Positions 8,941 to 40,274 of a stretch of DNA of 64,000 nt are shown here, piece after piece. The position numbers and the translations under genes were made by a program. The notes beneath the pieces were generated by a model. That model was not told where the DNA came from. It saw only the letters and a list, made by a program, of their open reading frames with translations, and did not search any database. The DNA is from Lepidodermella squamata (taxonomy: Eukaryota; Animalia; Gastrotricha). How positions within the stretch are numbered: the first letter of the stretch is position 1; each line of letters begins with the position of its first letter. The stretch is from positions 620,001 through 684,000 of the forward strand of contig JBLDXI010000003.1 of the NCBI GenBank assembly GCA_047495785.1. Reading direction: 5' to 3'.

Positions 8941-11633
8941 TTACAGTGCCAGCATTTTTGAAAGTAAAGCTTCAGCAATGGTTTTCTTTTCCAGTTCAAT
9001 AGCAATATCTATTGCACATTTTCCGTCCAAATTTCTCGCCGAAAACAAAGTCGCATCTCGTTCAGCAACGAAGTCAATATATCGCCGCACCTGTTCAACG
9101 CCCAAATCAAACGCGACGCATCGATGCAACACCGTATTACCGGCTTCGTCTCGCTCGCCGAGATTAGCACCATGATCGACAAGGATCGCCGCACATTCGC
9201 TGCAGACAAAACAATCCAGTATGGGCGAGTGAAAATTCGGGTCCGCCCCGAATTCTTCTATCAGGCATCGGACAACTTCCGGCTGCTCCAGCTGGCAGGC
9301 AGTGTGGAGGGCTGTCTGGCCAAATTTATTCACCTCATTCAGCATATCTGGGTGGCGGCTCAATATAAACCGAACGCCTTCGATCGAGCCAAGCTCAGCA
9401 CAAGCATTATGCAGCACATTAGGGTACATTGCCTTGAAAGTTGCGCGAAGATTCGCCCCTTTCTCGACCAGATACTCGACTATTTCCATCGAATGAGAGA
9501 AGGCTAGAAGAACCGGGGTAGAGTCGCATTTGGTTCTAGCTTCGATGTCGGCGCCACACTCTTCAACTAGAAATTTGATCATTTTCATAGCGACTTCGAT
9601 GCCCGCCTCGCCTTCGTCGGCATGCCACATAGCCCTGGCAAGAGGCACATATCCTGAGGAGCATTCCACTTTGACATTGAGATGGTCAGGGCAGTGCTTG
9701 AAGATATATCTGAACGAATTTGTATATGCCATCCATAGAGAAAAAAATGACCAGAGTAAGCTAAAATTTTGATCTGCATTATTAAATCGAGTGCTTTCTC
9801 AAAACGGATATCTCCGTTTTTCACCAAATTTGCATGCATATAGAACACGAGCTGCTCTTTCGCGTGGTATATGATTTGAGGTGGGCAATTTCTGCTCATC
9901 AAAATAAATGAAACCATAGTGAAAAAGAGGTTTTTGTATCGTAACAGCGGTTGCGTTGCCCACCTCAAATCTTACACCACGCGAAAGAGCAGCTCGCGTT
10001 CTATATGCAGGCAAAATTTGGTGAAAAAGTTACTTTTGAGAAATTCAACTTTGACTAAAAATGAAGGCTTAGCTTGAGTGCTTATTCTGGTCATTTTTCT
10101 CTATGATGCCATCTTAATAAACTATGATTCATCTTCTTTACCTCACAGTTTCAATGTCGCCACTCCCAACAGCTGCGTAGAAAAGGGTTTCGTTGGCGTG
10201 CCATTCGTTCAGTTTAGCCCCTTTCTCATGCAGAAACTTGACAACGCCAACCCTGCCGCTTCTAGCCGCCGAAAACATAGCTAGAGTCAAAACTTTCGGA
10301 CCCGAAATTGACATGACATTCTTCTCCTCGACTAAGAACTTTACAAGGTCCAGGTGGCCTCGTTTCGCAGCCTGAGTGAAAATCGATTGTCCCTTCTCAT
10401 TTTCAGCCTTTAGGAGATCACTATCGACCTCATCGAGGAAAAACTTCGCCGTATCAACGCTAGATACGAAATGAATTGCCGCGGATTTATTCTTGAAGCG
10501 ATCAGTCGCGTAGACATCCGCTCCATTTTTGACAAGAAATCTGGCCAGGTTGGCAGCCGAATCTTCTTGGCTAGCAGCAACCTGCATCAAGGCAGTTTTA
10601 CGCCAATTATCCAGGACATCGCGGTGGTTCGCCAAGAAGATTTTGGCACTGCGCGATAGCTGCTTTCGAGCGAACAAGCGCCGCACAAAATCAAAATCGC
10701 CTGTTTTACAGGCGTCGTGAAACTGAATTAGATCAGTCGGGATCTAAGAGCCATTTTGAAGTCATTTCACCAATTAAATTTCGCAAAATGTCACCTTCAT
10801 TTTCGGAGTTTCTAGGCTAGCGTCTTGCTCATCTAACATTTGAATCTGCAATCAGGCAATTGAACTAATCAGGAATGCAAAAACTTCTAAAAAGAACCTT
10901 TCGATCTATTTCCAATGCCAGGTCATAGATTTCGATGAATTCGCCTACAGGGCTGTAAATTGGCGATATTGAGTCCATGGCCTTCAGCTTCATATTTAAA
11001 GCTTGAATCATCACTGGCAATTCATCGGAGATCTGCCGAAGATCTTCCAGAGCTTTGGTTTCCATAGCAACGGGTTCACTCTCCAAAATGCTTGCGAATT
11101 TCGCCTTCGCGTTGACACTGCGCTCTTCAACCTGTTAAAACTTGATAATGCTGCCAAGAACCAGTTCTGTCACTCACCCCTGACCAAATAATGTTAACTT
11201 CGAGCTTCAGCATCTCAATATGAGAAACAATGCAGACAGCGCACAGCTTTTGGTCGCAGTGCGAGCATAAAATAGCCGAATCTGGAGCCGTGAATGTAGG
11301 GACGTGCTGGCAATGCTCGCCGAAATTTTTCTCGTCCCACAAATACGTCAGTTCTTCCGGCGGGGATTTGAACATTTTGTACGATTTTCGGCCTAAAAAT
11401 GCTGGCCCGTCAATGGCTCGAACAACCTTAGCCAGCGTCTTGTTAGAGCTCAACTGGTCGTCGGCTTTGCGTTTCTTTAGTTGCGGTTGTGGAAAACGGC
11501 ACACAGGGCAGGTGAAAACGCCCTCATTTTTAAAGAGGATTCCAGCCACGCAGCCTCTACATAACGAATGATTGCATTTCGGCAAGATGACTGGCTCGTA
11601 AAAGTTCTTCCAGCAAACAGGACAATCCAAGGC
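8941..11633 (-). CDS. RING + B-box-like + coiled-coil + ankyrin-repeat protein (TRIM-like putative E3 ligase); first coding exon not located
   Basis: Exons 11633-11178 (C3HC4 RING CPVC..CNHSLCRGC..CPVC; CQH..CSHCDQKLCAVCIVSH), 11131-10898, 10845-10795, 10743-10142 and 9709-8941. GT-AG junctions are phase-compatible. Ankyrin motifs include GQTALHTAC, GNTVLHRC and AAKRGHLDLVKFLVE. Stop at 8941-8943. Confidence 0.85.
9730..10110. mobile_element. Palindromic MITE in an intron of the RING-ankyrin gene
   Basis: Long inverted arms: ttttcaccaaattt...gagctgctctttcgcgtggt...tttgaggtgggcaa versus its reverse complement at about 9956-10028. Outer arms are catagagaaaaaaatgaccag / ctggtcatttttctctatg. Related fragments occur at about 11800 and 35490. 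Confidence 0.8.
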
Positions 11634-12231: not shown

Positions 12232-12906
12232 CTAAAGTTTTCCGCTAGTTGAATTTCAGCTCCTTCTTCAGCACGGGTGTTTCATTCAGGTCTTCTTTTC
12301 CTAGACCTCTTGTATTGGGGAAACAATACCCCTCAGTCTCTCTACAGTCTGTCGAACTTAGTAAAAGCACGTTTCCCAGGATTTTCGGTAATAGCACATG
12401 TCACAGGTCAACCACATTCAAATTCAGCCCGAATTTCCGTAAAAAATAAATGTAATAGGTCGCTGAACTTACAGATAATAGACTGCCGTTGAAATCGAGC
12501 GACTGATAAGCAGGCGGCAAATCACAATTGTTCTGCATTTTTATGCAGCAAACCCGATCAAACGACAGAGATGAATGCTGCAACTCCAAAGTAGCACATA
12601 TAGTCTAAATTACAAGATACTTTAAGAAAACAGCAATATAGACCATGTTTATGCCAAGGTGAAATCAAACGTTCACCCGACGTTCTCCTTCCATTTTCCC
12701 AACTAAGAATCATGTGCAATTGCTTGAAGTAACAGTCATAAACAGCGATTCTTTTGGTTTTCAAAGGGAGACTTTCCAATTGTCGGCGAATTGGCGAACT
12801 GTATAGACGAGATATGGTTATCATTCCATATCTCGTCTTTCTCGTCACAATTGTCTTTCCATCGATTGAACGAAAATCGCGATATTATAGCGATATCAGA
12901 TATCAT
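12232..12906 (-). pseudogene. Decayed exon of an unidentified gene family (paralog at 39.3-39.7 kb)
   Basis: Acceptor ttttag at 12907. Fragments KRIAVYDCYFKQLHMILSW..GLYCCFLKV and MQNNCDLPPAYQSLDFNGSLLSVSS lie in different frames with stops; they align with ORF 39267..39707. Confidence 0.6.
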
Positions 12907-13085
12907 CTAAAAAGAGAAAATATGATTAGAATAAATTATACCGAGAATAAAAAGGAATACAATTTACATCTCCAATGATAAAACATTAGTCCTCGTAATT
13001 TCTTTGTAGTTCACTTCAGTTTACTCTCCAAACCTTAATTTTATTACTCCCGACGCAGCCTCAAATTGTTTTAATCAGTCAATGT

Positions 13086-16262: not shown

Positions 16263-18170
16263 TCGCCTGTACTTATCTGTTTACTTTTCAGATCGAAGAC
16301 ACAACGGTGCTGAAATGATGTTATCTAATTGAACCGCTCGCTAGCTATTTGCAGCTCTGTTGTTAATTGGTTGAACATGCCAAGCGGACGGACGTGAACA
16401 AAATACTTGAAGATGATCCGGTGCCCGGTGCTGCAACATCGCTTCAAAGTGTGAAAACATGGCTCTACAACAAAACATGCTTGATCCCCTTTCCTATTCT
16501 CGGAAGGCGGCGTGATTACTGCACTGCCGAAAGTGCCCCGTTTGTGCCAAGTATAAAGCATTGAACGTACCTTTAGTATCCATCCGCCCGGTGGATGAGC
16601 CTTTCGCCCTCGTCGATGGATATGGTCAGCACCGTCGAAACGCTTTCAGACAGCTTTTGCCCCACCGGTTGCTGAAAGCACTCTAAAATTGCATTTCATG
16701 TCGACCGTTTAGAGCTGCATACGGATCCCTATGATATCAGGTGCTATCTAAAACGAGAAAAATTTAAATTGAGTAAATCATCAGAAATGAAAAAGGAATC
16801 AATTTTGGATTTTTAAATAGCAAAATGAGTCCTCGGCAAAGCTACTCATTTTTCGCCTCCCGAGACATTCGCCCGTTGTGGACACGCCTCAGCAAACCTC
16901 AGTACCGCCTGCTGCACTGGTAAAACAGGAGTGAACTCAAACCTGAACAAGATGACTCTGATGACTCTGACATGAACACTATTTTGATACTTATATTTGA
17001 GATGATATTGCTCATACTTGCTCATACAAATATGAAATATGTACTTTCTCAAAACCAGCTCATATTTTGCTTCTACCAATTTCATCTTCCTTCGTCCTTA
17101 GATTTCGTCTGGTTATTCCGACGACGACGAATTAAATTCGACGCCGCGCGCCACTTCTTCCGGCGAAGCCACACCGCGCGGAACGCTGAACATTGGCGGC
17201 ATTACTCGTTACGCCATCGGCGAGGCGGAAATGTCAGATAATTTCAAACTGAAGCAAGGAAGTGTTAAGAATTTTTGCGCCTCCGCTCTTCAAGACTACG
17301 CGAAATCCAAGATTTTGGCAATCGTTAACATGAACTCCGAATAATTCAAAAGTTTAAGGGTGCTCCGACAGAAATCGTACAGGAGACAGAATTCACGATC
17401 ATTTGTCGGTAAGATACAATTTCTAATTATTTTATGATCAGGCAGAACGTTTGCAATTTAGCCTTGACCGTTCGAACGAAAGCTCAACCATCGCCATCAT
17501 TGTCTTGAAGGATTCAACGAGTGCTAGCATCATGTACTTTTGGCAGGAAATGACACCTGGGTCACTTATCAACCTGGCCCATCCGATCCCAAACGGCTTT
17601 TGAAAGAATACCAGGTCCTTCCGCGTTGACATGCTTGTCCCGAAGGTGGGTGGCCCGATGAAACGCAACGCTTTCCTGATTGACGGAGTCATTCCTTTGG
17701 ACGCCTGGCAAGGATTCCACCTTCACGTGGAGAAGTTAAACGTCGTTCGTGTGATGTATGCAGCCGAATCCTGTAGCAAACCCGCCTTCGACGGTCGCTG
17801 GGGAATTTCGTGTCACTGCTACCAGAAACGGCCCCCGGAGGTGATCAAGAATCTTATTGCTATCGACTTTTCGTCGAAGGAATTCGGAGGGCTGGCGACC
17901 GAGACGTTCGCCTCAAAGTCGTTGGCCCTGCAACTGCTACCTGCTGCTGTTGTTCACGATTACGAAGAAAAAAATGTCGAAAAAAATCGGCGCCCACTGC
18001 AAGGAGCCACGCAGCCATCGAGGAGGACGTATCGGCTTCGTCCTATTGTTTACAAAATATCTGCTGAAGTGTCGTCTATTTCGTCACCTAGAGATGCTTA
18101 TCAGCTCTGCCTACTTCGTTTCCTATTTCGGTAGCTGATGTGAGAAAATTTTCAGCGGTAACAATAAAAA

Positions 18171-18758: not shown

Positions 18759-20354
18759 TGCTTTGAATAATTTTTAATTTAATTTAATTTTTAAGCTCAG
18801 CTGAAATCAGGTACTTGGGCATGTATGTATTTTTGATACTTGATTTACCCCATGCTTCAATATCAGTGTGCCATACTATTTCAAACCAAATCTATATTAA
18901 TATGTCGCTACACCAAAAGAGCAATTTCTTTCAATCACTAGTACGTATTGTTCAGGCTCTTAATTGCCAGATATCATCTACCTGCGAGCTTCCCCGAACA
19001 CTATGATATAAGTCGTTGATCGTAGTCGTTATCCATTAAATCTACCTCGGTGATCATTATTATTATTAATTTTGTCAGTGCTTTCTACATATGCATGATT
19101 GCTCAATTGAACACTTTCTTTCTTTTTTCTACATATTCTCGGGAGTTTTGCTATATCTTTCATAACTGATTTACATGTTAAGGGGTGCTCGAATTCGAAG
19201 CTTTCCTACATATCTATGTGTCCCTAGTTTGCTCTATTGAGCCATTATTGAGCCACTGGTAATAAATGATTGCATATTCATCTGATTCTTCACGATTTTG
19301 GAAAACGAGCGACTGGCTGATTCAGTTGAAAGCTCATATTAACTATCCTTGCGTTTTTACAGCCAATTTGTCAACCTGTCCGGTTCCATCAGGTAACACA
19401 AATATTATTTTTCATGATAGATAATTTATTCTTATTTCAGAGAAAGGTGAGTTATCACGCGTCACAGGTGGTGGTGAATAATTCAAGTGTTCCATAACAT
19501 AACAGCAACTTTCCTATCATTAATTCTTACCTAACAATAACCCAGTACAAACATATTAAACTCAACTAACTTCGCTTTTTCACATTTCCTCTAGCACTCA
19601 ATACTCAACCAACCCGGCGCGTCTGAATGAGTCACACACAGAGACTTATCTGCGAGTTGCGAGAATTGGGCAAGCAACTTCTGCTATAAGGTATAAGCTC
19701 CTGCTACTGATAAGTTGCGATGGCCTCTTTGGAAATTTGAATTATTTGAATTCAGTAGAGCATCGGAAATTTCCGTTAAGGACACCTTGAATCTGATTTT
19801 TAGCTCAGTTAACTTGTTCCCTCGATTTAGACCGGAATTTGCTGTACGCTTGTACGTATAAGCTAGGCAAATTCAGATTCAGTGCGCGAATGTGATAACG
19901 AAGCAAAAAGAAACATCCGTAAAATTTACAACAGTTTTGTACATTTATCGCCGGTCCAGATGAAATTACAAACCTGAATCACATCATTGATATTATCGAG
20001 CGACGAAGACAAATCGAAGTCGCCGAGCTTGATTCGCTGAAGGTTGGCGCGGTCGTCGTAACGCGAACGCGTCCGGCTCAGGCATTTCCATTCGGCCGAC
20101 TAGAGCTACGTTATACGCTTCTCCCGATAACACAGCGTCTTATCTAAAATGAGGAAATGTACAGAAAATAACTGGAAATGAAGCGGGAATATATTTGAAT
20201 CCTCGAATATTGGCAAATCAATCCCCTTAATGAAATTGTTTCAAAATGGAATCCACTGTCACCGGGCATATCGGCTTTCGTCTTTGGAATTCGAAATTAC
20301 GAGGCGGCCAATGTATTTTCTGCAGGCGAGACCTGCATTTGGCTCGACTCGGGG

Positions 20355-20452: not shown

Positions 20453-20604
20453 AGAAGTTGTTTTGTTTCGATACCGCGCATGAAGGAAATCATAGCTCTC
20501 CGCCGAATTTTCAGCAAACACATTTTAAGAAGGTTAATTTTATAAATTTTTACAAAAATTAATGTATTAAAATTAAAATGCCGCGTGCGGGCTATATTTC
20601 AACT

Positions 20605-22300: not shown

Positions 22301-24759
22301 ATTTGCGGATGCAGGAAGCTCAGCCCTGCTCGCTGCTAGCAATGCTTCCCTTCGACGGGCAATGCGCCCAGCAACCTACTCAAACGAGCCGAATCTATCA
22401 TTTCGGATCTAGATCTAGAATTTATATGTGGAAGCTCGCTACCTGAATTCAGCGCGAGCTAGTCCAGCGGCAGCTATTGGTGAAGCGGTGGGAGCTAGTC
22501 GACTGTAGGCTAAAAAGCGAGTATGCCAACCACGAATTCTTCGCGAAGCCGTGCGTGCAAGACGCGGCATATGGGTACTCGCTCGCACTATTCCCTTTTA
22601 CATTTCCACTATGCGAATGATAAACGATGGTAATTACTCGATTGTTAGTAATTACCAGCACAGTTACCAGCTCGTCCTGTATGAATGCTCCATTAATGCG
22701 TGCGAGTCAAGAATGAAAAAAGTCAAGATTGAAGCTACCGAGTGAAAAAGTGCTCAATGATAGCAAAAATCTATTGCGCCGCCAAAATAGCACTGCATTC
22801 GCAACAAGCTCACAGCCTCACAGTCGCCCTTGCTACATTGATGTCTCAGTATGCCATGAAATGATGCACCGCACGTGAATATAGACCGCAAACATCTCTA
22901 AATGATATTATTGTGAAAATCGCGGTCTAATAAGCGTTTTTCAGATGCGGTCAATGCTACACACTGCATTCAACAAGGCCGAAAATTTCACGCTTATTTG
23001 GAACAATAAAAATTTCAATAGGTTCAATAAGTAATTTGCACATGGTGGTCCAAATGAAATTAAAAAATTCACTAACCTGAATCACATGACTGACATAATC
23101 GGAGAGGGACAACACCGAATTCGTTGTCTCAGGCTTCGTTACGCGAGCGCATCCGACTCAGGCAATTCTATTCGGCCGATTGGAGCTGGATGAATTCCCG
23201 ATATCATAGTGATATGGCGTCTCATCTAAAATGAGAAAATGAGAGTAAATAAGCGGAAAAAGCGGGAATTATTTTGAATCTCGAATAGCAGCAAAATTAA
23301 TCGCCTTATGACTTTTTTCAAAATAAAATACGCTCTAATCATGAAATCCATTGTCACAGGACATGCCGGGTTTAATTTTTCGGAAGCTACGGTAGTTAAC
23401 ATAAGTGAGGTTTGATCGACAAATGCGGTTTCTCAGCTGTTCAATTTGTTTGCCATTTCACTGCGAGAATGAAAATGAAGCGGCGTTCAAAATTCTGCGA
23501 AAATATGCTCGTCAAATAATAATTGCTTCCTCTACATTTACCTTTGTTAAACGTTTTCAAATGAGAACAAGGTTCCCTCTCCAGCTGATCTGGGCTGTTG
23601 AATGTGTGGAAAGTTCATCGGTCAGGACAAGGCCGAAGATCGTTGTTATCCCCTGATGGCGGCGATGGCGATGCCACCGATTGCGACGATTACAACCTCA
23701 CTAATGCGAACGACTGGTCGCAAGTCGCGGTGGCTGTTGCCTGTTGCCCGTATTTTTTTCGCTGAAGACCTCGGAAATAATTTCCTATTTCAATTACAAT
23801 GCGCGGACGACCGTCCACCGTTCCCGAAATAGTACCGATCCACAAACATGTTTCGTTGAAATAGGCTGAACATTCCGCTGATGCTTATCGAAGGCGCTGA
23901 GGCTACTCTCTAACCGCCGGAGACGAGATGGCATCATGCGTCAGACGAATGCGAACGATAAACTTGGAACCACCTTTAATCTCTCGCAAAACCGGAGCTG
24001 GATAAATAAGTGAACACGAACTACTCCGATCTGGATAAGGTAGATGCCGAATATGATTTCTTCAGCGAATCAAACGAACTATTAGCCTTAGAGGTCGATG
24101 ACGACGTCTTTGACATTTCATTTCATTGATTCAAATCAATAACTCAAATCTGAAATGGTCTGGCCATTGAAATTTCGCGTCGCAATGTTTATACATACTT
24201 GTTACCTCTCTGTTCTAGAAAACTGCCTGATCCTTTTAGTTAGCTATCCATCTCATCATCTTAATTGCTGTCATCCTTTACGTCAGACATGGTACAACAG
24301 TGATACGGTCACATCTGCATCAGATACGGTCAAATTCTTTGTCTAATCGGCACCTGGAGGCAATCTTACTGGCCCGCCTCAGATCTCGGCACCGGCATCT
24401 GTAGGCGATCAGAACCAGGCACCTGAATCTGAAGACAACATCAATGTCGTTCTGACAACATTCTCAACGACGTTGAGAATGTTATTCCGCTAATAGCTGC
24501 TCCTCCCCAGGTTAGTCCAAAAATTATTCAACTACGACGTCGACGACATTGCTAATTATTTCATATTTTGCAGGCAGTTCCCGACCTGATTGCCGGCGCT
24601 GTTGATCTACCACTGGATATCGACCAGGACATGGAATTAATATTACACATGGATTAATCTTGTTAAGTCTTTTGTTCGCTCGTGCTCTTTCACTGAAGCT
24701 ATACTGTTTTCACTTTCAAGTTGTACCATAATTTTGTCGATGCTAAATTTTCAGATCTA

Positions 24760-25570: not shown

Positions 25571-26959
25571 AACGCCGAAAAATCCACATGTGCGACGACA
25601 AACGAAGCATATAATGAACGTTATATTTAACATTGAATAATCGAATCCGCGCGCGATTTCGCTACAACGCAAGACCACGTGTGTGCTACGTTCACAACTA
25701 CTTTCATTTACACGATTTTTGATCTGTTTGTTCGAGGTGTTGCTGAACGTGGCCGAGTATCGTTTTTCTGAGATTTGTCAACTTTTCAAGAAATGACATG
25801 CCAAGATGCTGGAAAATCTTACCAATCGCATCCTTCCACAAATTATATTCCAGCCAATAGCGATTTTGTGGATTCTTTGGTTCCACTAAGAAAACAAATT
25901 TAAGCAACATTTAAAAATCAAATATAAATATAAATATACAAGTTACCCTTATGGACTGGTGCCATCAACTGGTCCCACTGCCATCGGCCATCATCAATTC
26001 ATCCCTCGGCTACAGCTTGCTAGTGTTATACGGATCCTCCAGATATTGAAGCGCTATCAGTGCAATCTAACATGAGAAAATGTAGAGAGTATTAAATCAA
26101 CGGGAATGAAATGTGAATAAATTTTGGATTAACAAATAGCAAACTGAATCCTTGGAAATTCTTTTGTATTTCACACTTCGTGCTGTTGACGCTCAAACAA
26201 CAGATCGGAACTACATTAACAGACGCTCATTTCAAGTACTGAATGGCCTATGCGCTGAGCAGGCATTGAGCCGAGCACTGGATATTGTCGAAATGTCGAA
26301 AGGCAGATAAGTAGTTTGAATAAATGCAGCAGGAGAGGGCACAGTCTAGGCGACCAAATATGAATATGTGATGCATGTTTTTGGTTCCGATCTAAAATCT
26401 AAATTGCTTCGCTACTGGCCCTTGTGTTCGACGCCTTATCAGGTTGAGGTTTGAATGGTCATGTTGTGGGACGAGCATTCTTGGATTCCAGAGCGAAATG
26501 TGCGTACTGAAGAAATTTACGGCTATCCATTCAATCCCAAATCACTCAAGACAGGTGGCTCAATGCGGCTTCTCCACTGTTCTTCCACTGTCGACTGTCA
26601 ATTATGCGACTATTTTACCGCAGATATGGCACAGAAGTCTGTTTATATGCGGCGTGACGTTTTCTCAAGTCTCAACTGATGCTTTGCCGTATACTGATGC
26701 TCGTACCGTTTACTTTCCTTATAATTCATTTTCTCATTTCTAGTTAAATTAAAAACCCTACCTCTTACCAACCATGTCTAACAATGAAAATACCAATGTT
26801 GATATTCCCATGTTCGATGAGGAGCATGGGGCGGGCATCGAAGAGCCAACGGCTCAGCCCACCGGCCAAAGCCAACAACAGCAACAACTTTCTTGCAAAC
26901 AATTGTCAAATTCAATAAAATCTTCCCCGAACCAAGAAGTTCCTCCTCATCCATGAAGG

Positions 26960-27976: not shown

Positions 27977-30012
27977 TGCTTTTATGAATCTGCAAATTAG
28001 TTGAATGTTTTGTATTTGCGAGCCATACATCAAGGTGATCTCGTGATCTCGTTGGAAAGCTAACATTGATGGGGATACGCCCGCATCCCGCATGATTAGA
28101 TGCAGGTCTCACAACCGCGAATATCCGAATAATATTCTGTTAGCAAATTAATTCGTTTTGTGGTAAAATTGGGGCATAAGCGAGCAGATCAAAGAGGATT
28201 AATTTCAAACACAACTTATCAACATGGCTGTTACATGGCTGCAACAATTCTTCAACGAGAAGCCAAATGATGAGTCTGAGGCGACATCTACGCGACTTGC
28301 AAAAATGGTCACTTGAGAGAATAAACCCTCGACTCCACCCCAGTAACAACAAGCTATGATCTGCGAAGCGAAGCGCTTTTTGAGTCCTAATCCTTGAGGA
28401 TAGGCATGCCCCCCACATTGGCGCTATTGCAAACGCTTTTTAGGAGGTTCTGCCACCAGGTCGTCTGATTCCAGGTGAGCGCCGGCCTGACGAGACATAG
28501 ATGACAACGATCAGCGCAATGTTGACATTCAGGACGCGCTGATTCTTAACGATCGTTTTCGATACGCTTACGGACGACTTTTAGGAGGAATGTTTTTGGA
28601 AACGTTTCTACTTTGGTCATTTGCCTGGAAGTGTTGGGAGACAAGGAGCTGTGGGTTGGTTGTCACTATTCTTTGCGGAGGGTGCTGTGTTAAGCTGGTT
28701 GACTCGAGCATATAATGGGACGAATGGGCAAGGTGGAAAAATTATTCGAAGGTTCGCTTTCTATCAATTAATGAACCACCCGATGCTTGAAAATTGCGCC
28801 GGAACGATGACTAACGAAATAGAGGTAGACTAACGAAATAGACTAACGAACTATTCTCGAATTCCTCGGTGAGGAGGAGCTGCCGCTTAACTTTCGATTC
28901 TACAACACGGCTGTGATTAATCATGAAAGCTACGATGGCAGACTGCTTCGACGTGGTGCTAGGAGACGCTTGCCACGCTCATTCGGCGTTGTTTTTCAAG
29001 AAAATTCACAGTCTTACATGATACATATGTATATCGTATATCGGTTGTAGAGGCTAATTATATTTACAACAGGGGGCTGGCGATCGAGGAAAATATCCCT
29101 AACGTTGGCCAACGAATTATGAATTTTCTGGATGTGCTCGCGCGAAACTCTAAACGCCCGCAGAGCTGCCGTAGCTTCGGTAGAGGTTCTAGCCCAGCGT
29201 CTATTTTTCATCCCATTTTTGAGCGAGCTTTTTTTTACGTCATTCCATGGCAGTTGGGCGAAGAAAGTTGTGCCACTTAGAGTGTTATAACTTCGTGTTT
29301 ATAAATTTTGATTACTCTCGTGAAAGAAGGCAAATCTGATCCACGATATTCTGCCGATTTTACCGGTGGTCCAATGAAATTACAAATTCACAAACCATAA
29401 TCGCAGCACTGAAATTATCCAGCGAGGAGTAAATTTCGAAGTCGTCGGGTGGATTCGCTGAAGGTCGGTGCGGTCGTCGTCACCCGAGCGCGTCAGCTCA
29501 AGGCATTTCCATTCGGCCGTTCAGAGAACGTCTCCCGATACCATTGCGTCTTATCTAAAATAAAAGTAAAGTAAATCACCGGAAATGAAGCGGGAATCTA
29601 TTTTGAATCTTCGAATATCAGCGAATTAATCCACCTGATGAAATTCTTTTCAAAATTGAATCGGAATCACCCCTGTCAGCAGGCAAGCAGGCTCCCGTCT
29701 TTTGAATTGGTGTGCAACAAAATGTCTTCATTGTCCTAGCGATCGATACGTGGCTAATTTTAAGCTTTTTAACCGATCTAGGATGAAACCGTCCTATGAA
29801 TTATTCTCCTATAATTCCCAAAATCTGTGCCCTTCTCCGTCGCAACTCTTTGCGCTCGGTAATGCCGAATACAGATCCGAGGATGGGCGAACTTTGAGGA
29901 CTAAAAAGGCATGCCACTCTAGGTCTTATAGTAAGTGGATAAGATGAACATTTCCGTATGACGAAGTTAGATTAATTCAGTCAAGCCGACACTCCCAATT
30001 ATTCATTTTGCA

Positions 30013-31898: not shown

Positions 31899-34800
31899 GC
31901 GGCCCACTTGTCAGCGACCCACCCTGCCAATACACCATTCGATTTGCCAAGTCGAGTAAATTTGAAGAATATATAGACATGTGATGTCCAGTGGCCATTA
32001 AGGCATACTGACCACGAACAATATGTGAAAATCTGCGATTTAAAATTTGACTTAAAGCTGTCCAGATGACACTATTTCCAGTCGTATTGACATCAAGGTA
32101 GCATATGGATAAGATTTGGCGCGCGAATTTCAGTGCTCATTTCGACTAAACCAACTCTGCTATCATTTCTAAATTCCTCATTTCTCTGCTATCTTGGAAA
32201 TGACATCAGCTGAAGAAGTTTTGTCAAAACTTGCCAACTGGAGAGAACTTAATTTATCGTCGAAGTCAAGAGTTGGGCTATGCAGATTTGTTTTATTTTT
32301 CCCTTTATCCCTACAGGGCGAGATGAAGACTCGGTATGGGCCTATGTCAGCAAGAAGCTGCATAAGGACGAAGATTGGGATCACAGGAAGTATGCTTACG
32401 AACAGTATCGCGAAGAGATGCGTAAGAAAGGAGGCGGAGGTACTTCGAAACACCTCGAAGAACTCGAACAACGCAACCAATTGCCACCTGCTGAGCAGTT
32501 CGTCGTCAAAGTACCATTTACGGAGACGTTCAACCCGGTTGCAAAGAAAAGCGGAACACTCCGAAACGGTAAACCCCGCATGAAATTCAAATTTGACACA
32601 GGTTGGGCACTCTGCGCGACACTTCCAAGCCAGTCACGGGTTGTCGCATCTTCTTCGATACTCATGGCATTTCCCAGGGCACACGAATAGCAACTGGGAA
32701 CGGCGAATGCCAATATTCTAAGTGCCGAAAGTTCGAATTCCACTGTGATTTGGACGGGCATGCTTCTGGCTTTCGAGCCTAAAGTTGTTTCAGGTAGTAA
32801 TTACAGAGTTTTTGAAGACCCATTTATCTATTTAAACTGGCAGGAACCTTCAATCATGACGGAGAGCCTCGAGTCGAAATGATTTCCGGCGCAAAACGCG
32901 ATGAAATGGCCGAAGAGCTCAAGAAGACGACAGCGAAAAAGTTGCATGGCGAAATTATGGGGGAAATTCCTAGAAAAGACTTCCCTGATCTTATTCTGAA
33001 TAATTCTGCCTTGAAAGGGTTAATATACCGAAAACTTGAATGAATGACATGTTTTTGAAAATCGCGGTCTAATAAGCGTTTATTAGCTGCGCTCCATGCT
33101 ACAGACTGCTTTCCATGACATTCAACATGGCCGAAAATTTCATCTCAAAATCAGCAACCACATCGCTCGCGCGATAGGTGTCCGCAAATTTCACGCTAAT
33201 TTGAAACAATAAAACTTTCCTTAAAGTTTCGATAGGTAGTATGCACATTTCCCGGTGGTCCAAAGTCCAAATGAAATTACTAATTCACAAACCTGGATCA
33301 CATCACTGACATTATCGGCGTAGGGACATCGCCGAATTCGCCGAATTTCGCGGTCTTCGTTACGTGAGCGCATCCGGCTCAGGCATTTCGATATGGCCGG
33401 TTGGAGCTGGGTTGTACGGACGGATCTCCCGATATCATAGTGCTATGGCGCATCCTCTAAAATGAGAAAATAAATCTGGAGTAAGTCATCAAAAATAAAG
33501 CGGGACTCTATTTTGAATCTCGAACAGAAGCATAATTGAACTTCTTCATGAATTGTTTTTTTCAAAAAAAATTCGCTCAACTCATTGATCAATTGTCACC
33601 GGGCATGCCGGCTTTACACATTCGGGAGCTACTGTGGTTAACATTAGCGAGATTTGATTTACAAATGCGGCATCTCCGCTGCTCTTCCATTATCAGCTGT
33701 TTGCCATTGCGCTGTTGACTAACTGTTTGCCACTGCGGATACGGCCCACTGTTGCAATTATGGCGGTGGGCATATCGCAAGCTCGAAGGACTGTCCTTCG
33801 CACCGGCCCTCGGCTGGCTGAAGCGAAAGTTTCATGAGTCGGGTGGTAACGGGTCGGGGGGGTGCCATCACTCAAAATTAGGATAGTTAATTAAGATGAT
33901 GGGATAATTAAGAAATGGGATAGTTGGGTTCCCACTGTGGATGGGAGAAGGAGATCCCGCCGGTCCGTCCGCGATCTTCCGTCACGCGTGACGCCGTAGG
34001 GGCATAATTTGATCTGCCCGATCGGCGTCCATTTCGGAGCTATCTCTGCGGCCTTCGCCATTCGACCCTGTTCAGGCGCAGTTCCAGGTCGATGCGACCC
34101 GTTATCACAACCAGTATCAACATAGTCCGGCTGATGGGCCGACGCTAAGTAAGGAGCTGATCTGCCCATTTTGCTCTAAAGCGAAGCCCAAGAAGAATTT
34201 CCGGCGACATTGCCTTGCTTGCGCCAACAATGGTAGAGCGAGCGAAGGAAATGCTGAAGCTGAAATAGCCGCTGCGATTTCCGCCGCTGAAAGCTGAAAC
34301 ACCCGAGGAGCACAACACCAGGCTGATCAGAGAAAAAGTGACTACAACCCTAAAAAGTCGCTGAAATCGTAAGCAAACCATGCGGAACGTCGTCGCAATT
34401 TCCATGTCGCCATCAAAACTGTTTACTAATTTTAGGCAGGAAAATATGAAGTCTTCATCGAGGCGCAAAGCTAAAATGTATGATATTCTTGAGCGCGGCA
34501 GGCGCCTTTACAATGCACATTCTGTCTTTCTCAACATGACATGGCAGCGGACCCAGCGTCACCTCATCGAGCTATTGAAGCGTATCAACCTTGTCGGTAA
34601 CATCTCAACCATATTGCCATCCAATTCCAAAGCGAGGACGCAATCAAGAACAAGAGCCATCTATCTTTATATGGACATTCACGTCACGGATGCCCCCGAT
34701 ACTATCACCAGAAAGATTTGTTGCGATCCGCGTGAGTTTTTCTCTGAGCACTATGGCACCGACTATGAGTCGCTCGGGCGCTTCGGTTTTGTGAAGAATT

Positions 34801-35267
34801 TCGACCACTTTATTTTAGAGCCTTTTTCCCGGCAAAAACCAAACAGAACGTTTCTCAACAACTTGGAACGTTTGACGTGTTTGTGGATTGCAGTTTGACG
34901 ATCAAGATGGCAAACCTATTTCTGGAGCAAGTAGTATTTACCTGATAGTAGTCGTCATGTTTTCCTTGGCTCGCCTATGGCCATTCGGGCTCAACTTTAG
35001 CAATTCAACGTGCTGTTGAAAATGTCCCACAAAAGGTCACCATGGCTGCCGAACCGGGCTTGATGGCCAAACGGGCAAAGAAATATCAAAAGATTAATGA
35101 AAAAATTTCTAAAATTGTTGATGTTTTCGTTGCCAAACCCAGCAAAGACAAACAGCTCGTTTACGCGACGCTGGACAAACCGTCGGTTAACATGCTCTCT
35201 TTATCAAAACTATATAAATCAGACTTGTTGATTTCTCACATATCAAATTTTTGCGTCATTAAATTCG

Positions 35268-35562
35268 GCATTTCGGCAAAATGACTGGCTCGTAAAAGGT
35301 CTTCCAGCAAACAGGACAATCCAAGGCCTGATATAAATTACAACGAACAGGGACTATTTGAGTGGGTGTTTTCGAAATGCAGAATTTTAGCGATTCTGCC
35401 AAATATCAGTTAGGGAACCATATGTTACCCTAGGAAAAGAACAGAGTGTGACTAATGTACAACATTTACCTAAAAATTGTAGGAAATTCATAGAGAAAAA
35501 AATGACCAGATGACCAGAGCTATAACTCAAGCTCAAGCTTTGAAGCTAAAATTTGAGTCCGA
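35268..35562 (-). pseudogene. Duplicated 5' piece of the RING-ankyrin gene (start of RING exon plus upstream sequence)
   Basis: catttcggcaaaatgactggctcgtaaaaggtcttccagcaaacaggacaatccaaggcctga aligns with 11575-11637; similarity continues to about 11870. Confidence 0.85.
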
Positions 35563-35699
35563 AGTATACCAGCTGTATACTTTACATTTCTACGTCGGAT
35601 GTTTTCAAGTATCACAAGGATCACAAGGTCAAGCTATCTTGCGAAGGGTAAATACTGGAATTTCAGTAAATTAATCAATTAAGCTTCATCCAACTTATC

Positions 35700-36010
35700 G
35701 GTTAGGTCTCCGGTACGACTATTTGCGCAATGCCGACATTCAAACCGCCGTTCGTCTTCTGGCCGCTTTGGCTTTCCTGCCCTCATCAGGCTTGGTACTG
35801 AGGATGTTCCGCCACCTTCCTATAAAATTACTGCACTACGGGCTACTTATCCACCACGAAAAGCTGAAAGATTTGCACATATATTTTAGAAATACATCTG
35901 GGCCATGCCGGTGAGTTTGGCCAGCAAATAGTCCCGCGCTTCCCCATTGATCAGTGGAGCCAGTACGACCGCTCGGCTCCCGCGGTCGGACGCCTCGTTG
36001 GGGGGATTCC
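35700..36010 (+). mobile_element. MULE-like transposase fragment
   Basis: IQTAVRLLAALAFLP...LHIYFRNT...FPIDQWSQY (ALAF.P...YF..T...FP...W..Y). Confidence 0.65.
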
Positions 36011-37276
36011 ACTACGGGTGCAGTGGGACTCTGGGTGACAAGCAGCCACTTCCCAAGTTCTTTGATCGTCTTTTGGTAAGCTTACAATCGTTTGGGCTCG
36101 AAATTCCATGCTAACTTATTTTCTGTGTAGATCGAACAAAACCATTACGAAGATACCCTTCACCACTTGGAAAGTGGCCGGCAAGTTTAATCAGCCGAGA
36201 CATGCTGATTACGTTCAGCTAGACACTGAACTTTCGAACATCGTACGCGCAGCTCGTCAAAAAACACATTCCATGGTACTAATGAACAACTAATGCAATA
36301 ATTGCGTGATGTCGTCGCCGCATTTGAACGCCATGCCATCAATTGGCATGTCGACGACTTGGGTGATCCCGGTGGTCGGATGGAAACCGACGACGAAGAC
36401 GAGGCAACAGCAACAAACAACTAATTATGAACAATCGATACGAATAACGCCATTAATTATGATCAGTTTACATTAATTTGGCTTCAAAATTATGACTAAA
36501 AATGTGTAAGTATCTATCCCATATAGATACCAAGGGGCAGTTGATCGAAGGTCATTTACTGTCATCTCCTCATTTTTTAATTATCTTGCACCGCCGAATA
36601 TTTATCAAAGTTCCCACGGAAATATGATAAAAAAACACCATTTATCGTACTTTTAGCATAATTTACACACCTTTATTACGAAAACCCTATATATTATTGC
36701 ACAAATTATATGTTACGACGGATTGTTGAGTCGATATCCCATGGCGTAACACGTTTTTAGTACCGAGAAGAAGGGTATATATACCAACGCCGTGAATTGA
36801 TTTTCATCCACTTCATCATCATTATTTGAATTACTATCCGATTTTCGATCAATCAATGGCGAGAACATTGGCTTTGGCCCGAAAAGCCGCCGGGCGGCGT
36901 CGAACAGCAAAGCGCGCTCGAAAACCACGGGCGAGTTTTTCCTTGGCCGACAAGGAGCGGCTGGTAAGCCTGGCGAAAATAATACTTTGATTCTCTTAAA
37001 GACAAGAACTCCTCTAACGAGACTGCATTGGCAAAGCAAAGTGTTTGGAAGACAATTGCTCGCGAATATGCGAAGAAGCCATAGCGACTGGATCAACCTC
37101 CACTCTGCTTGCTTCTTCACTCAACTCTTCTGAACAGAACCCGTTCCAAAAGTACGATTGAACATGGCTGAATCAGATTGACATTATATAACGAACAATG
37201 ACTTTCTTATTTTTCACTTTTCATGATACATTAGTTGTGATAGAAGATAGAGCTAGAAGGTCGACCATTTTTAGTA

Positions 37277-38947
37277 GCGGTAGTGCCGCCTTTCCTCAAC
37301 CGCCTTTCCTCAACATACAGTTTCCTCAACGTATTGTTTACACAACATGTGCACAACTCAACCGTGCGCGCGAGTGGGGCTCGGGTACGGGCGCGCGACG
37401 CGTGCGCGACGTGATGTTTGAAAACAGGTGACATCTATTATTATCACGACCGTAGCCAGTCCACCTTAATTGAAGGCCACTTACCTAATTGCCACGGTTG
37501 TTGAGACTATTGTTAAGATTTTCGCTGTTGATTTTATTACGAATTACCGAGGATTTCCTTGAATTGCCCCAGCAGTATTGTTCAGTGTGCCGCTCATGGA
37601 CGGTATGCTAAAAAAGGCTCTCTAGCAGTGTGCGACTTTCAGGAGGGGATGGGGGGATCATTCCCCCCCCCCAGCTCGGCCGGGCCAGACAACAAAATGA
37701 AAATGTATCCCACTGTTTTGTTAATTTTGGAAGGTTCTGGAGCGTGTTTTAGTGGAAAATCACCAAAATTTTATCGCTTCGCTCGGTTATTAGCCGAAAT
37801 GACTCGTCATTTTGGCATATACAGCAAAAAATTTTTTTTCCATCCCTGGGAGCTCGGAGATCGAAGATCGCACCCTGCTCTCTAGGCAAGCTACCGAAGC
37901 CGGGTGTTCCTCACTTGCGCATGTATTTCGAAATTATTCGAACTTAAACTTCATACTTTAATACCGGAATCAAAAAAGGTGCAATGACTAGTTCATTTAT
38001 CGCGCGCCGCCCGCCGAAATTGACCGAGAACTTCACCCGAGCATCGATGCTTGCAAACCACCATAGAGCATAGAGCAGCCACTTTTTTAATCGCATATTA
38101 GATCAGAAAAGTAGCAGAAGACGCGCATGAGCCAATTCATTAATAATTAATTAAAATATTCGCCCAAAAATCTCAAAAATGTCGAATACGTGATCAAAAT
38201 TTAACATTTAAAAGTTGACCCGTATTAGCCGAAACACACGCCTATGTGTATCAATTTCGAAAAATTCCTGTGTGTTAACGGTGTCGAGCCTGTCCGATTA
38301 TGATATATATTTTGAAAGGCCATGATGTCATCTATCTACCATGATTTGTTCGATTTTTTCCCGAATTGCCATTAGGTAAAAAACATCAATATAACGTAAC
38401 ACAGTCAGCTGATTACGTAAAAAACAGAGGTAGCGTGATTTCTTTGACTTGCACTTTGACTTTAGCAGCCGTGTGTCCCTCGAAAAGTTTTATCCAATTC
38501 AACAAATCAGACCTATCGCTATCATTTAAAAAAATAACCATCCCAAGATATATAATTGCCTTGATGCTATTAATTTCCAAAAAATACTACACGCCGGTGT
38601 GTGCTCAGGCAGTAAGTGGAAAATCCAAGCAATAAAAGTTACGCAGTTGTGGTTACGCTCTTGAGAGTGAGGCAGGATGCGTGCCCCCATGAATCCTTAG
38701 CTTAGAATGAATACTTAGCAAGTCATCACTCCACGTCTCCCCCAGGAAGGAATTTTATAGCGTGACTTGAAGTCTTTGAGCGGCGCTGAGCGAACTCAAC
38801 GCGCCTTATCAATTTCATCGACTCGCTAATCCTACTTAATCCCACTTATGCTAGAAAGATGTTGAGCTAAGTACAGGTTGAGTAAATGCGTGTTGTGAAG
38901 CAAATATATGGTTGAGGAAAGGCGGTTGAGGAAAGGATGGCGAACCT
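37277..38947. mobile_element. Non-autonomous TIR element of about 1.7 kb with a nested insertion
   Basis: cctttcctcaaccgcctttcctcaac at about 37289 is the reverse complement of gttgaggaaaggcggttgaggaaagg at about 38911; weaker similarity extends about 80 bp. Confidence 0.65.
37626..37877. mobile_element. hAT-type MITE with 8-bp target-site duplication
   Basis: ctctctag|cagtgtgcga ... tcgcaccctg|ctctctag; a lone similar end lies at about 52324-52343. Confidence 0.85.
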
Positions 38948-39329
38948 TAGTAGCTAGGCAAGCCGAATTTGAAATAAACCATTATTGCATGCTTATTTTC
39001 GATTCAAAAAAGCATTAACAGGGTTTAGTCACGTGAATTATCGATCAATAATACTGCGTTCGATATCGTTCAATAATTTGATTCATTTCGATTTATTTAA
39101 AATTTGCGGAGTTGTCGCTGTTTCAAAATTGTATTAAATGTGTAAAGATAATTAGTTGTCGAGTTGTCGGTAATGAAATTAATTTAAAATTATTTTTTAT
39201 CGGTGTTTCCGGAGTTGCCTGGACTGAGTTGTCACTATCTGTACTGACTCGGCAGTTCACAATTAATTAATAAAATAAATTAAAAAAAATAATTACCGTC
39301 GAAAAAGAGCGAAAATTGAATTTTTCGTC

Positions 39330-39734
39330 GTTTTTCGCTGTCACTTTTCTAGAGGGGCCTGGTAATAAGTTAAAATAAAATGTGAAAGAACTTACTGATA
39401 ATAGGTTGCCGTTGAAATCGAGCGACTGATGGGCCGGTGGCAAATCACAATTCATCTGCATTTCTAACGATGCACACCGATCATCGATAGTGACAAATGC
39501 AGATATTTCACAATCGCACGTATAGTAGTCTAAATCCCAATAAACTTTGACAAAACAGCAATGTAGACCTTGATTTTTGCCAAGGTAAAACCTGCAAAGT
39601 TCACCCGACTTTCTCCGGCAATTTTTCCAACTAATATTCATGTGCAGTGGCTTGAAGTAACTGCCATAAACAGCGATTCTTTTGTTCTTCGAAGAAAGAC
39701 TAGCCAATTTTCAGCGAATAGGCGAGTCGAGATG
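39330..39734 (-). pseudogene. Exon of an unidentified gene family, paralog of 12232-12906
   Basis: ORF 39267..39707 KRIAVYGSYFKPLHMNISW...CDLPPAHQSLDFNGNLLSVSS; acceptor tttttatag at about 39735. Confidence 0.6.
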
Positions 39735-40274
39735 CTATAAAAATTGAAAAAAAATTGTCTCCCCGTCAGCTGTTGGCGCTGGCCAATATCTCTAATGATA
39801 TTGGCCAGACTCTAGAATCGGCGGTAAATGCTGGTTCTCCTCCCACACTTGGCATTGCGAAGATCGCCCATCTGATCCTAGCGTGACAGGTACACGGGAG
39901 TGAAGTTTATTCCCTTTCGTCTCTTTCTATTCCTGTATAAAATTTGTTATTTTTCTTTACTTTTCTCGAAGACGAAGGAATAAAGATAACGTTATGTTAT
40001 GTTATGTTAATGATGAAAAATATGTCCTTGGAATCATCTCCATCCCTCAATTTATTCCTATTGGCATAGCCTGATATTACTTCAATTAGTTATATAATAT
40101 CGGACCCAAGTTAGGTTGAACCCCCAGGTTCTCTATCTCCGCTCGCACCGCCGCCTTTACTCCATGGCACAGATCAGGTCTCTGCTACAAGCGTTTCACT
40201 AGTAAAATTGCCGTCGAACTGTTGTCCTTATTTCGCCGTTATTCTCCACATGGCGGTATTACATCGAAAAGCAT

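What the first reader, a model, noticed from the sequence alone, without database searches (positions are those of the whole stretch)
19950..20300. Cassette keeps splice sites but not a reading frame
On the - strand the cassette reads donor (G|gtgaca, at about 20260, 23355, 33597, 42431), an intron of about 110-140 nt, acceptor (cattttag|A), an exon of about 150-185 nt, then donor (CAG|gtttgt/gttagt at about 19972, 23075, 29394, 33291, 42158, 44957, 47621, 52652). The AG and the second GT persist across diverged copies. The exon has indels between copies, and stops in all three frames in the copies I translated fully (20.0, 33.3, 42.2 kb). The intron core is the most widely conserved part. This suggests selection for splicing or an intronic cis-element on a non-coding RNA. 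Splicing-linked small-RNA licensing is known for flamenco and for Cryptococcus stalled spliceosomes.
Basis: partly seen in the sequence, partly recalled or inferred. Interest (0 to 1): 0.8.

Follow-up and report, generated by a model that had tools for sequence, protein, structure and literature searches.

The report
Tandem non-coding exons spliced in series
A 45-kb stretch upstream of a RING-ankyrin gene holds at least 14 diverged same-strand copies of a non-coding exon, and RNA contigs show four neighbouring copies spliced head to tail, so this is a spliced non-coding RNA or gene leader of a known general kind rather than the two-exon cassette first described.

Summary
The repeat is real. 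There are 14 copies, all on the minus strand, spaced 2-4 kb apart (one gap of 8.7 kb).

- **Splice sites:** every copy keeps an AG acceptor, and all 11 copies with a definable exon end keep a GT donor.
- **No reading frame:** every exon has stops in all three frames, and exon lengths (149-244 nt) are of mixed phase.
- **RNA evidence:** contigs of a probable RNA run (X2) join the exons at exactly these sites, c26 to c23 to c20 to c16. The c23-to-c20 joint skips 2,933 nt with GT..AG ends.
- **What the "intron core" is:** the 3' end of a roughly 3-kb intron. Its unchanged positions are a branch-site-like TnAnTT, the pyrimidine tract and the AG.
not supported. GT is present in only 5 copies, and RNA depth is zero over 20201-20400.
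- **Origin:** the last copy, c12, lies 368 nt upstream of the ATG of a RING-ankyrin gene and is homologous to the cassette exon. The array therefore grew by duplication of that gene's non-coding 5' exon.

I found no snoRNA, miRNA, conserved RNA fold, transposon protein domain or coding parent. The most likely reading is a multi-exon non-coding leader or upstream transcript acting in cis. The small-RNA idea was not tested. Only 4 of the 14 exons could be checked against RNA.

The parts
19974..20143 (-). Cassette exon c20 (170 nt, non-coding), the focus of the finding
   Evidence: X2 contig of 117 nt lies at 20003-20119 with no mismatch. The acceptor at 20143 is joined to 23077, and the donor at 19974 is joined to c16. 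Stops in all three frames.
20144..20254 (-).
   Evidence: Profile hit 20131-20254. Unchanged columns at -32..-27, -13..-11, -5 and -3..0. No consensus fold.
20257..20263 (-). No evidence that it is used.
   Evidence: Located. GT is kept in only 5 copies. X2 depth is 0 over 20201-20400.
23077..23225 (-). Cassette exon c23 (149 nt)
   Evidence: X2 contigs at 23077-23154 and 23151-23210 with no mismatch. Joint 23077 to 20143 with GT..AG ends on the minus strand. A loose end at 23226 leads to c26.
25823..26066 (-). Cassette exon c26 (244 nt). The donor is RNA-supported; the acceptor is placed by homology.
   Evidence: The 10-letter loose end upstream of c23 matches 25824-25833 exactly and is followed by G|gtaag. 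Acceptor from the alignment.
16571..16747 (-). Cassette exon c16. The acceptor at 16747 is RNA-proven; the donor at 16571 is predicted.
   Evidence: The 30-letter loose end after the c20 donor matches 16718-16747 at 30/30 and is preceded by ttttag. Donor CTAAAG|gtacgt is homologous to the c49 donor.
29396..29554 (-). Cassette exon c29 (predicted, 159 nt)
   Evidence: Homology; ttttag acceptor and ATG|gtttgt donor.
33293..33456 (-). Cassette exon c33 (predicted, 164 nt)
42160..42319 (-). Cassette exon c42 (predicted, 160 nt)
44959..45140 (-). Cassette exon c45 (predicted, 182 nt)
47623..47779 (-). Cassette exon c47 (predicted, 157 nt)
49710..49882 (-). Cassette exon c49 (predicted, 173 nt; sister of c16)
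52654..52841 (-). Cassette exon c52 (predicted, 188 nt; the upstream core is not recognisable and the acceptor reads tttgag)
55113..55220 (-). Acceptor element c55 (first exon base 55117; donor not defined)
57054..57118 (-). Acceptor element c57 (first exon base 57075; donor not defined; sister of c26)
12682..13008 (-). c12, the last copy: acceptor element plus the RING-ankyrin gene's own non-coding upstream exon (first base 12906). The homologous donor is lost (TTAG|tt). A possible donor GTCGG|gtgaac lies at 12682/12681.
   Evidence: Profile hit 12884-13008, sequence, tree placement with c16 and c49, coordinates.
12473..12577 (-). Start-codon exon of the RING-ankyrin gene (ATG at 12538; ends TCT|gtaagt)
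   Evidence: Sequence and coordinates. In frame with the RING exon that starts at 11633.
8941..11633 (-). Coding exons of the RING-ankyrin gene (RING 11127-11633; ankyrin ORFs 10138-10686 and 8941-9732)
   Evidence: Pfam RING and ankyrin hits. X2 holds 63% of the sampled words of 8900-11650, which is about the ORF share of that stretch.
35265..40183 (-). Partial duplicate of the gene's 5' part inside the array: upstream block and intact ATG exon at 39388-40183, and the start of the RING exon at 35265-35564

Best explanation
**Shown.** The interval of about 12.9-57.1 kb on the minus strand is a tandem array of at least 14 old duplicates of one unit. Each unit is the last 100-130 nt of an intron (branch-site-like motif, pyrimidine tract, AG), a non-coding exon of 149-244 nt, and a GT donor with about 50 nt of the next intron. 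Four neighbouring exons (c26, c23, c20, c16) are joined head to tail in RNA at exactly these sites, across introns of 2.6-3.2 kb.

**Shown by homology.** The unit derives from the non-coding upstream exon of the adjacent RING-ankyrin gene. The last copy, c12, sits 368 nt upstream of that gene's ATG.

**Inferred.**
- One long minus-strand primary transcript runs through the array, and exon definition at each copy yields a multi-exon non-coding RNA.
- This RNA most likely continues into, or ends just before, the RING-ankyrin gene. It would then act as an alternative, upstream-ATG-laden 5' leader or as an upstream transcript working in cis.
- Selection acts on the splice signals, that is on being spliced, and not on the exon content.
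For: - **Copies and strand.** All 14 copies lie on the minus strand (binomial p about 1e-4). Of 59 repeat pairs in 11-64 kb, 56 are direct.
- **Splice sites.** AG in 14/14 and GT in 11/11.
- **Signals.** On a tree of 13 copies the mean is 2.9 changes per column. The 16 columns with no change cluster at the branch-site-like motif, the pyrimidine tract and the AG.
- **Extent of conservation.** Identity peaks at -60..-1 (0.60) and in the exon (0.55). It falls to the shuffled level (0.22) by -300 and +141.
- **RNA.** X2 covers 12 of 30 bins, whereas the DNA run X1 covers all 30. X2 has a joint 20143/23077 that skips 2,933 nt with GT..AG ends on the minus strand and that is absent from X1. Its loose ends match the c16 exon start 30/30 and the c26 exon end 10/10, the latter followed by gtaag.
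- **Non-coding.** Stops in all frames and mixed length phase. The 11-exon concatenate has 50 ATGs and no ATG-started ORF above 52 codons.
- **Link to the gene.** Same strand, no Pfam-recognisable gene in between, c12 homologous along the exon and grouping with c16 and c49, and a partial duplicate of the gene's ATG and RING exons inside the array.
Against: - Only one 6-kb stretch could be laid with reads, so 10 of the 14 exons and the c16-to-c12-to-ATG-exon junctions are untested.
- X2 is only presumed to be RNA, and its contigs carry no strand information or expression level.
- c12 has lost the homologous donor.
- A lone acceptor lies 39 nt before the ATG. Other notes of this scan say this animal adds spliced leaders. 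The mature mRNA may therefore carry a spliced leader and discard everything upstream.
- The second haplotype seen in the DNA run differs at 8 sites plus one indel within the 149-nt c23 exon. Exon content is therefore free to drift, which also fits a function-less transcript.
Confidence: 0.55

Rival explanations
1. An independent long non-coding RNA whose repeated exons are the functional modules, for example multiple binding sites for one RNA-binding protein, as the RRD repeat is in Firre. It would act as an RNA rather than as the leader of the neighbouring gene.
For: Exons chained in RNA. No ORF. Some short exon motifs recur across the type I copies (GATATCGGGAG; GCC..ATGCCTGAGCCGGA; CGATAATGTCAGTGATGTGATTCAG). 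Exonic local repeats are a documented lncRNA feature (PMC4820808).
Against: The exon is less widely conserved than its acceptor region. Types II and III share little more than the first 30 nt of the exon with type I. No conserved fold. There are many haplotype differences in exon c23. The last copy is the neighbouring gene's own upstream exon.
Confidence: 0.2
2. Function-less relics. Repeated duplication of the gene's 5' end left pseudo-exons that still happen to be spliced from read-through transcription, with no selection on the array as such.
For: A partial gene duplicate lies inside the array. Other collinear blocks between closely related units are about as similar as the cassettes (72% against 76% for c20 and c29). 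The exon sequence drifts freely.
Against: Across the deep splits the rest of each unit is unalignable, yet AG is kept 14/14, GT 11/11, and the branch-site-like and pyrimidine positions have no change on the tree while the mean column has 2.9 changes. The coding parts of any former gene copies have vanished beyond tblastn detection while the non-coding exon units remain.
Confidence: 0.2
3. One reading: a two-exon cassette with a 110-140-nt intron whose splicing, or stalled splicing, licenses small-RNA production, as in flamenco or Cryptococcus.
For: Single-strand orientation and splicing of a non-coding transcript. A donor-like G|gtgaca exists in 5 copies.
Against: The first donor is GC in 2 copies and absent in the rest. 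There is no RNA over the proposed first exon or short intron. The acceptor is used with the donor 2.9 kb upstream. No transposon protein domain in the ORFs of at least 128 aa scanned in the array interval. No small-RNA data were available.
Confidence: 0.05
4. A dispersed mobile element (SINE or MITE-like) carrying cryptic splice sites that became exons.
For: Diverged copies of 300-700 nt with unalignable flanks.
Against: 14/14 copies lie on the same strand at 2-4 kb spacing. Other blocks are collinear between units. DNA-run depth over the cassette is like that of single-copy sequence. No look-alike turned up in other windows of this scan (the operators warn that a blank there means little).
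Confidence: 0.04

Closest known systems
Firre lncRNA with its exonic local repeat RRD (PMC4820808)
   Same: A spliced non-coding RNA in which one locally duplicated unit supplies many of the exons (RRD makes up 7 of 13 human and 11 of 23 mouse exons). The repeats are confined to the locus.
   Different: In Firre the exon repeat itself is the functional RNA module (hnRNPU binding, nuclear retention). Here the acceptor region is better kept than the exon, and no protein partner or localisation is known. The array abuts a protein-coding gene whose own upstream exon is a member, and is probably derived from it.
Tandem snoRNA host genes (fly Uhg genes and the mammalian SNORD116 host, from my own knowledge; a 14-intron H/ACA host in this same genome is noted by the scan, s1-407467)
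   Same: Chains of non-coding, poorly conserved exons spliced in series, with the conserved part lying in the introns.
   Different: No snoRNA is present: no Rfam match even at E up to 1, no conserved C/D boxes and no conserved fold. The conserved intron part abuts the AG and reads as splice signals. Introns are about 3 kb, not 100-300 nt.
lncRNAs whose splice sites outlast their exon sequence (PMC4408788)
   Same: Splice sites conserved while exon sequence and gene structure turn over quickly.
   Different: That work compares orthologues between species. Here the comparison is between 14 paralogous exon units within one locus.
Unistrand piRNA cluster flamenco
   Same: A long single-strand, spliced non-coding transcription unit.
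   Different: No transposon remnants were detected, small RNAs were not examined, and the exons are duplicates of a gene's leader exon.

Membership tests
Spliced lncRNA or leader with exonic local repeats (Firre-like) | The repeated unit coincides with exons of a spliced transcript | tested here: met
   Three exon-exon junctions among four repeat copies in X2 contigs.
Spliced lncRNA or leader with exonic local repeats (Firre-like) | No protein-coding capacity | tested here: met
   Stops in all frames, mixed length phase, longest ATG-started ORF 52 codons in 1,923 nt. No credible protein relative among 1.84 billion representatives: the 3 hits are low-complexity proteins and BLASTP finds no alignment.
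Spliced lncRNA or leader with exonic local repeats (Firre-like) | Repeats confined to the locus | tested here: inconclusive
   All 14 copies lie in one 45-kb interval. The rest of the genome could not be searched. DNA depth is like single copy.
Spliced lncRNA or leader with exonic local repeats (Firre-like) | The repeat acts as an RNA module (protein binding or localisation) | not testable with these tools
   Needs CLIP, FISH or reporter assays.
snoRNA or miRNA host gene | A conserved small RNA (boxes or hairpin) inside each intron | tested here: not met
   No Rfam hit at gathering score or at E up to 1. RNAalifold predicts 0 pairs on 13 copies. TGATGA is present in only 3 copies, and CTGA precedes the conserved TGAT in only 2.
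Unistrand piRNA cluster (flamenco-like) | Dense transposon fragments, mostly antisense to the transcript | tested here: not met
   No Pfam family in the 24 ORFs of 128-239 aa scanned between 12 and 58 kb on both strands. Short or non-coding fragments were not excluded.
Unistrand piRNA cluster (flamenco-like) | Production of piRNAs | not testable with these tools
   No small-RNA run was offered.
Mutually exclusive coding exon array (Dscam-like) | Equal-phase coding exons, of which one per transcript is chosen | tested here: not met
   No frame is kept, and neighbouring copies are joined to each other.
5' leader of the RING-ankyrin gene | An RNA junction linking array exons to the gene's ATG exon | not tested
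A protein search meant to fetch a transcript contig found nothing.
5' leader of the RING-ankyrin gene | Same strand, directly upstream, with the last unit homologous to the gene's own upstream exon | tested here: met

The most novel reading that the evidence does not exclude
The array could be a regulatory device specific to an animal that adds spliced leaders. Each duplicated exon unit supplies a donor that turns the long upstream region from a discarded outron into a chain of cis-spliced exons. Cis-splicing through the array would then compete with spliced-leader addition at the RING-ankyrin gene. The spliced chain might also feed a small-RNA pathway. Either way, the amount of translatable mRNA of a possibly immune-type gene would be set by splicing choice.
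Probability: 0.07. Interest if true: 0.75.

Novelty: new member of a known kind. Interest (0 to 1): 0.4.

Why it matters
Other notes of this scan describe this genome as compact. In such a genome, a 45-kb interval without a recognisable protein-coding gene stands out. It is filled with duplicated non-coding exons that are still spliced.

The locus gives a within-locus natural experiment. Fourteen paralogous units have lost exon similarity but kept the branch-site-like motif, the pyrimidine tract, the AG and the GT. This argues that being spliced, not the exon content, is what is maintained.

It also marks a probably unannotated transcript upstream of a RING-ankyrin gene. The locus could serve to study how cis-splicing and spliced-leader addition share one pre-mRNA.

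Tried and rejected
- **snoRNA or miRNA host.** Rfam on the whole window at gathering score and on two cassettes at E up to 1 gave nothing. RNAalifold found no pairs in the intron core and no compensatory pairs in the exon. Box motifs are not conserved.
- **tRNA-derived element.** ARAGORN found none.
- **Coding exon or decayed coding parent.**
  - Translation in all frames showed stops throughout.
  - A search of the longest open stretch of c20 (42 aa) against 1.84 billion representatives gave three weak hits. These are low-complexity proteins, and BLASTP gave no alignment.
  - tblastn of the neighbouring gene's ORFs found only the partial duplicate at 35.3 kb and the ankyrin paralogue at 60-62 kb.
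- **Transposon cluster.** I scanned 30 ORFs with Pfam. The only hits lie in the flanking genes.
- **Fetching a transcript contig of the RING-ankyrin gene.** The search for homologous proteins with the RING exon gave no hit. The length filter may have excluded the full protein.
- **Plus-strand ORFs in the introns.** The ORFs at 18171-18758 and 27257-27976 had no Pfam hit and no Atlas hit.
- **Other X2 contig ends.** The boundaries at 18202, 22219, 22451 and 22589 have no splice dinucleotides and match nothing else in the window. I read them as contigs of paralogous repeats from elsewhere, not as exons of this RNA.

Full report
**1. What is in the sequence**

Read on the minus strand, the stretch 19950-20300 contains the named motifs. 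These are G|gtgaca (20263|20262), cattttag|ATAAGACG (the exon starts at 20143) and GATTCAG|gtttgt (the exon ends at 19974).

BLAST and profile searches within the window find diverged copies (65-80% identity), all on the minus strand. A profile of the acceptor-proximal part finds 13 copies, at 12.9, 16.8, 20.2, 23.3, 26.1, 29.6, 33.5, 42.35, 45.2, 47.8, 49.9, 55.2 and 57.1 kb. One further copy at 52.7 kb has a recognisable exon and donor only.

All 14 copies share one orientation (p about 1e-4). Of the 59 repeat pairs in 11-64 kb, 56 are direct (p about 1e-13). Several other blocks are collinear between subsets of units. Examples are 18356-18792 with 27542-28010, and 16902-17090 with 30555-30728 and 50297-50395. 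The locus was therefore built by tandem or segmental duplication of units of a few kb, not by insertions of a mobile element.

**2. Splice signals and frame**

- Every copy has an AG acceptor: ttag in 13 copies and tgag in c52. Every one of the 11 copies with a definable exon end has a GT donor.
- Exon lengths are 188, 173, 157, 182, 160, 164, 159, 244, 149, 170 and 177 nt, of mixed phase.
- Each of the nine exons translated has stops in all three frames.
- Indels between copies are not multiples of three.
- The 1,923-nt concatenate of 11 exons has 50 ATGs and no ATG-started ORF longer than 52 codons.
- The longest open stretch of c20 (42 aa) has no credible relative among 1.84 billion protein representatives. 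The three weak hits are low-complexity proteins, and BLASTP finds no alignment.

On a tree of the 13 acceptor regions the mean alignment column has 2.9 parsimony changes. The 16 columns without change concentrate at -32..-27 (T.A.TT, a branch-site-like yTrAy position about 30 nt from the AG), in the pyrimidine tract and at the AG itself.

Mean pairwise identity among seven type I copies is as follows:

| Segment | Identity |
|---|---|
| -60..-1 | 0.60 |
| exon | 0.55 |
| +1..+60 | 0.42 |
| -120..-61 | 0.36 |
| -300..-201 | 0.20 |
| beyond +141 | 0.22-0.24 |
| shuffled control | 0.22 |

**3. RNA evidence changes the anatomy**

Two run searches found one probable RNA data set, X2. The tool calls it RNA "as a guess".

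- X2 holds 63% of the sampled words of 8900-11650, and ORFs make up about 67% of that stretch. It holds 18% of 19700-20700, where the c20 exon makes up 17%.
- Laid on 18001-24000, X2 covers only 12 of 30 bins, while the DNA run X1 covers all 30.
- X2 has error-free contigs inside exons c20 (20003-20119) and c23 (23077-23154 and 23151-23210).
- X2 shows a joint from 20143 to 23077 that skips 2,933 nt, with ends CT..AC on the plus strand. That is GT..AG on the minus strand. The joint is absent from X1.
- The contig that runs past the c20 donor continues with 30 letters that match 16718-16747 exactly. That is the start of exon c16, directly behind its ttttag.
- The contig that runs upstream of the c23 acceptor carries 10 letters that match 25824-25833 exactly, followed in the genome by G|gtaag. 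That is the end of exon c26. Ten letters are weak evidence on their own, but strand, order and the GT all fit.

The exons are thus joined c26 to c23 to c20 to c16, across introns of 2,597, 2,933 and 3,226 nt.

The proposed first donor G|gtgaca has GT in only five copies (c20, c23, c33, c42, c45). It has GC in c29 and c47 and no counterpart in the other copies. X2 has zero depth over 20201-20400. I therefore do not accept the 110-140-nt intron, although use in another tissue cannot be excluded.

**4. Where the unit comes from**

Directly downstream on the same strand lies a gene with a RING finger and ankyrin repeats (Pfam).

- Its ATG is at 12538, in a small exon (12577-12473, ending TCT|gtaagt). 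This exon is in frame with the RING exon that starts at 11633.
- The last array member, c12, has its acceptor at 12906, 368 nt upstream of that ATG. It is homologous to the cassette exons along the exon, and it groups with c16 and c49 on the tree.
- At the position of the cassette donor c12 reads TTAG|tt, so its donor is lost there.
- A partial duplicate of the gene's 5' part lies inside the array. The upstream block and an intact ATG exon are at 39.4-40.2 kb, and the first 30 or so codons of the RING exon are at 35.3 kb.
- An ankyrin paralogue lies at 60.5-61.9 kb.
- Between the two genes, 24 ORFs of 128-239 aa on both strands have no Pfam family.

The parent of the cassette is thus a non-coding leader exon, not a coding exon.

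**5. What it is not**

- **No small RNA or fold.** No Rfam family matches, either at gathering score on the whole window or at E up to 1 on two cassettes. There is no tRNA. RNAalifold predicts no pair in the intron core and no compensatory pair in the exon. No C/D box pair is conserved.
- **Not a snoRNA or miRNA host.** This matters because the same genome does have such hosts according to another note (s1-407467).
- **Not a mutually exclusive coding array.** No frame is kept, and neighbouring copies are joined to each other.
- **Not a dispersed transposon.** This follows from the single orientation, the collinear blocks and the single-copy-like DNA depth.
- **Not a flamenco-like cluster, as far as I could test.** It lacks recognisable transposon remnants. 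Small RNAs could not be examined.

**6. How it most likely works**

Shown: the exon units are transcribed and cis-spliced in series.

Inferred: a long minus-strand primary transcript crosses the array. Each unit is recognised by exon definition, because it keeps a complete 3' splice-site region and a donor. The product is a multi-exon non-coding RNA.

Three facts make me prefer a cis role as an alternative leader, or as an upstream transcript that runs into the gene (confidence 0.55 for the whole statement):
- the array ends in the RING-ankyrin gene's own upstream exon;
- it lies on the same strand;
- nothing recognisable lies in between.

With 50 upstream ATGs such a leader would translate poorly.

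Other notes of this scan say the animal (probably a rotifer, which I did not test) adds spliced leaders. A lone acceptor lies 39 nt before the ATG. Cis-splicing from the array and leader addition could therefore compete. This is speculation.

Against the relic view stands the retention of all splice signals across splits so old that the remainder of the units, and any former coding parts, can no longer be aligned. In its favour, the second haplotype in the DNA run differs at 8 sites plus one indel inside the 149-nt c23 exon. Closely related units also share other blocks at similar identity.

**7. Comparison with what is known, and limits**

The closest described kind is a spliced lncRNA whose exons are local repeats, such as Firre with its RRD repeat (PMC4820808). 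The pattern of "splice sites outlast exon sequence" is known for lncRNAs between species (PMC4408788). I file the locus as a new member of that kind.

Limits:
- Only one read-laying run of 6 kb was allowed, so 4 of 14 exons were tested.
- The contigs carry no strand information or expression level.
- The identity of X2 as RNA is inferred from its exon-bounded coverage and the GT..AG joint.
- The organism was not identified by me.

Noticed in passing
window 19656-19838 and 20508-20619: Four X2 contigs join opposite strands at a near-constant offset of 105-111 nt (19656/19761, 19681/19788, 19731/19838, 20508/20619). No genomic inverted repeat lies at 19.6-19.9 kb. The constant offset with shifting position looks like a library or assembly artefact (for example mates read as one record). 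It still shows low-level reads from intronic sequence.
   Followed up: partly
window 18171-18758 (+) and 27257-27976 (+): Two plus-strand ORFs (195 and 239 aa) inside array introns share a C-terminal half (35% over 124 aa). It has an AT-hook-like KRKPGRPKGAKD motif and an acidic tail, and both end at the same point. No Pfam or Atlas match. They may be a decayed or orphan gene antisense to the exon chain.
   Followed up: partly
window 35265-35564 and 39388-40183 (-): A partial duplicate of the RING-ankyrin gene's 5' end. The ATG exon is intact with its donor, and the first 30 or so RING codons are kept at 75-84% identity. The two pieces are separated by 3.8 kb, against 0.6 kb in the gene. The cassette-type acceptor element is not recognisable in this copy.
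   Followed up: partly
window 16902-17090, 30555-30728, 50297-50395 (-): A second block is shared by three units, upstream of c16, c29 and c49. In two of them it ends in a donor-like TTGTTCAG|gtttgag. It may be another, alternative exon type of the same transcript. The X2 c20-to-c16 junction skips it.
   Followed up: no
window 28128-28189 and 60298-60359: A 62-nt piece just downstream of the ankyrin paralogue's last ORF recurs at 90% identity inside the array. This hints that whole gene units were once duplicated.
   Followed up: no
window 13025-13173 / 40037-40183 and about 11930-12100 (-): Sequences with tRNA-like box-B motifs (GGTTCGA...) sit upstream of c12 and in the intron between the ATG and RING exons. 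They are possibly SINE-type remnants. ARAGORN calls no tRNA.
   Followed up: no
window 126-7064 (-) and 1107-1391: Downstream of the RING-ankyrin gene lies a run of EGF-like-repeat ORFs, probably a separate gene. It includes a 12/36/96-nt tandem repeat, listed as period 96 at 1107-1388 and period 12 at 1142-1391.
   Followed up: no
window 22007-22589 and 18076-18400: X2 contigs with 1-6 mismatches each, and with ends that lack splice dinucleotides, lie here. They are probably transcripts of paralogous repeats from elsewhere in the genome.
   Followed up: partly
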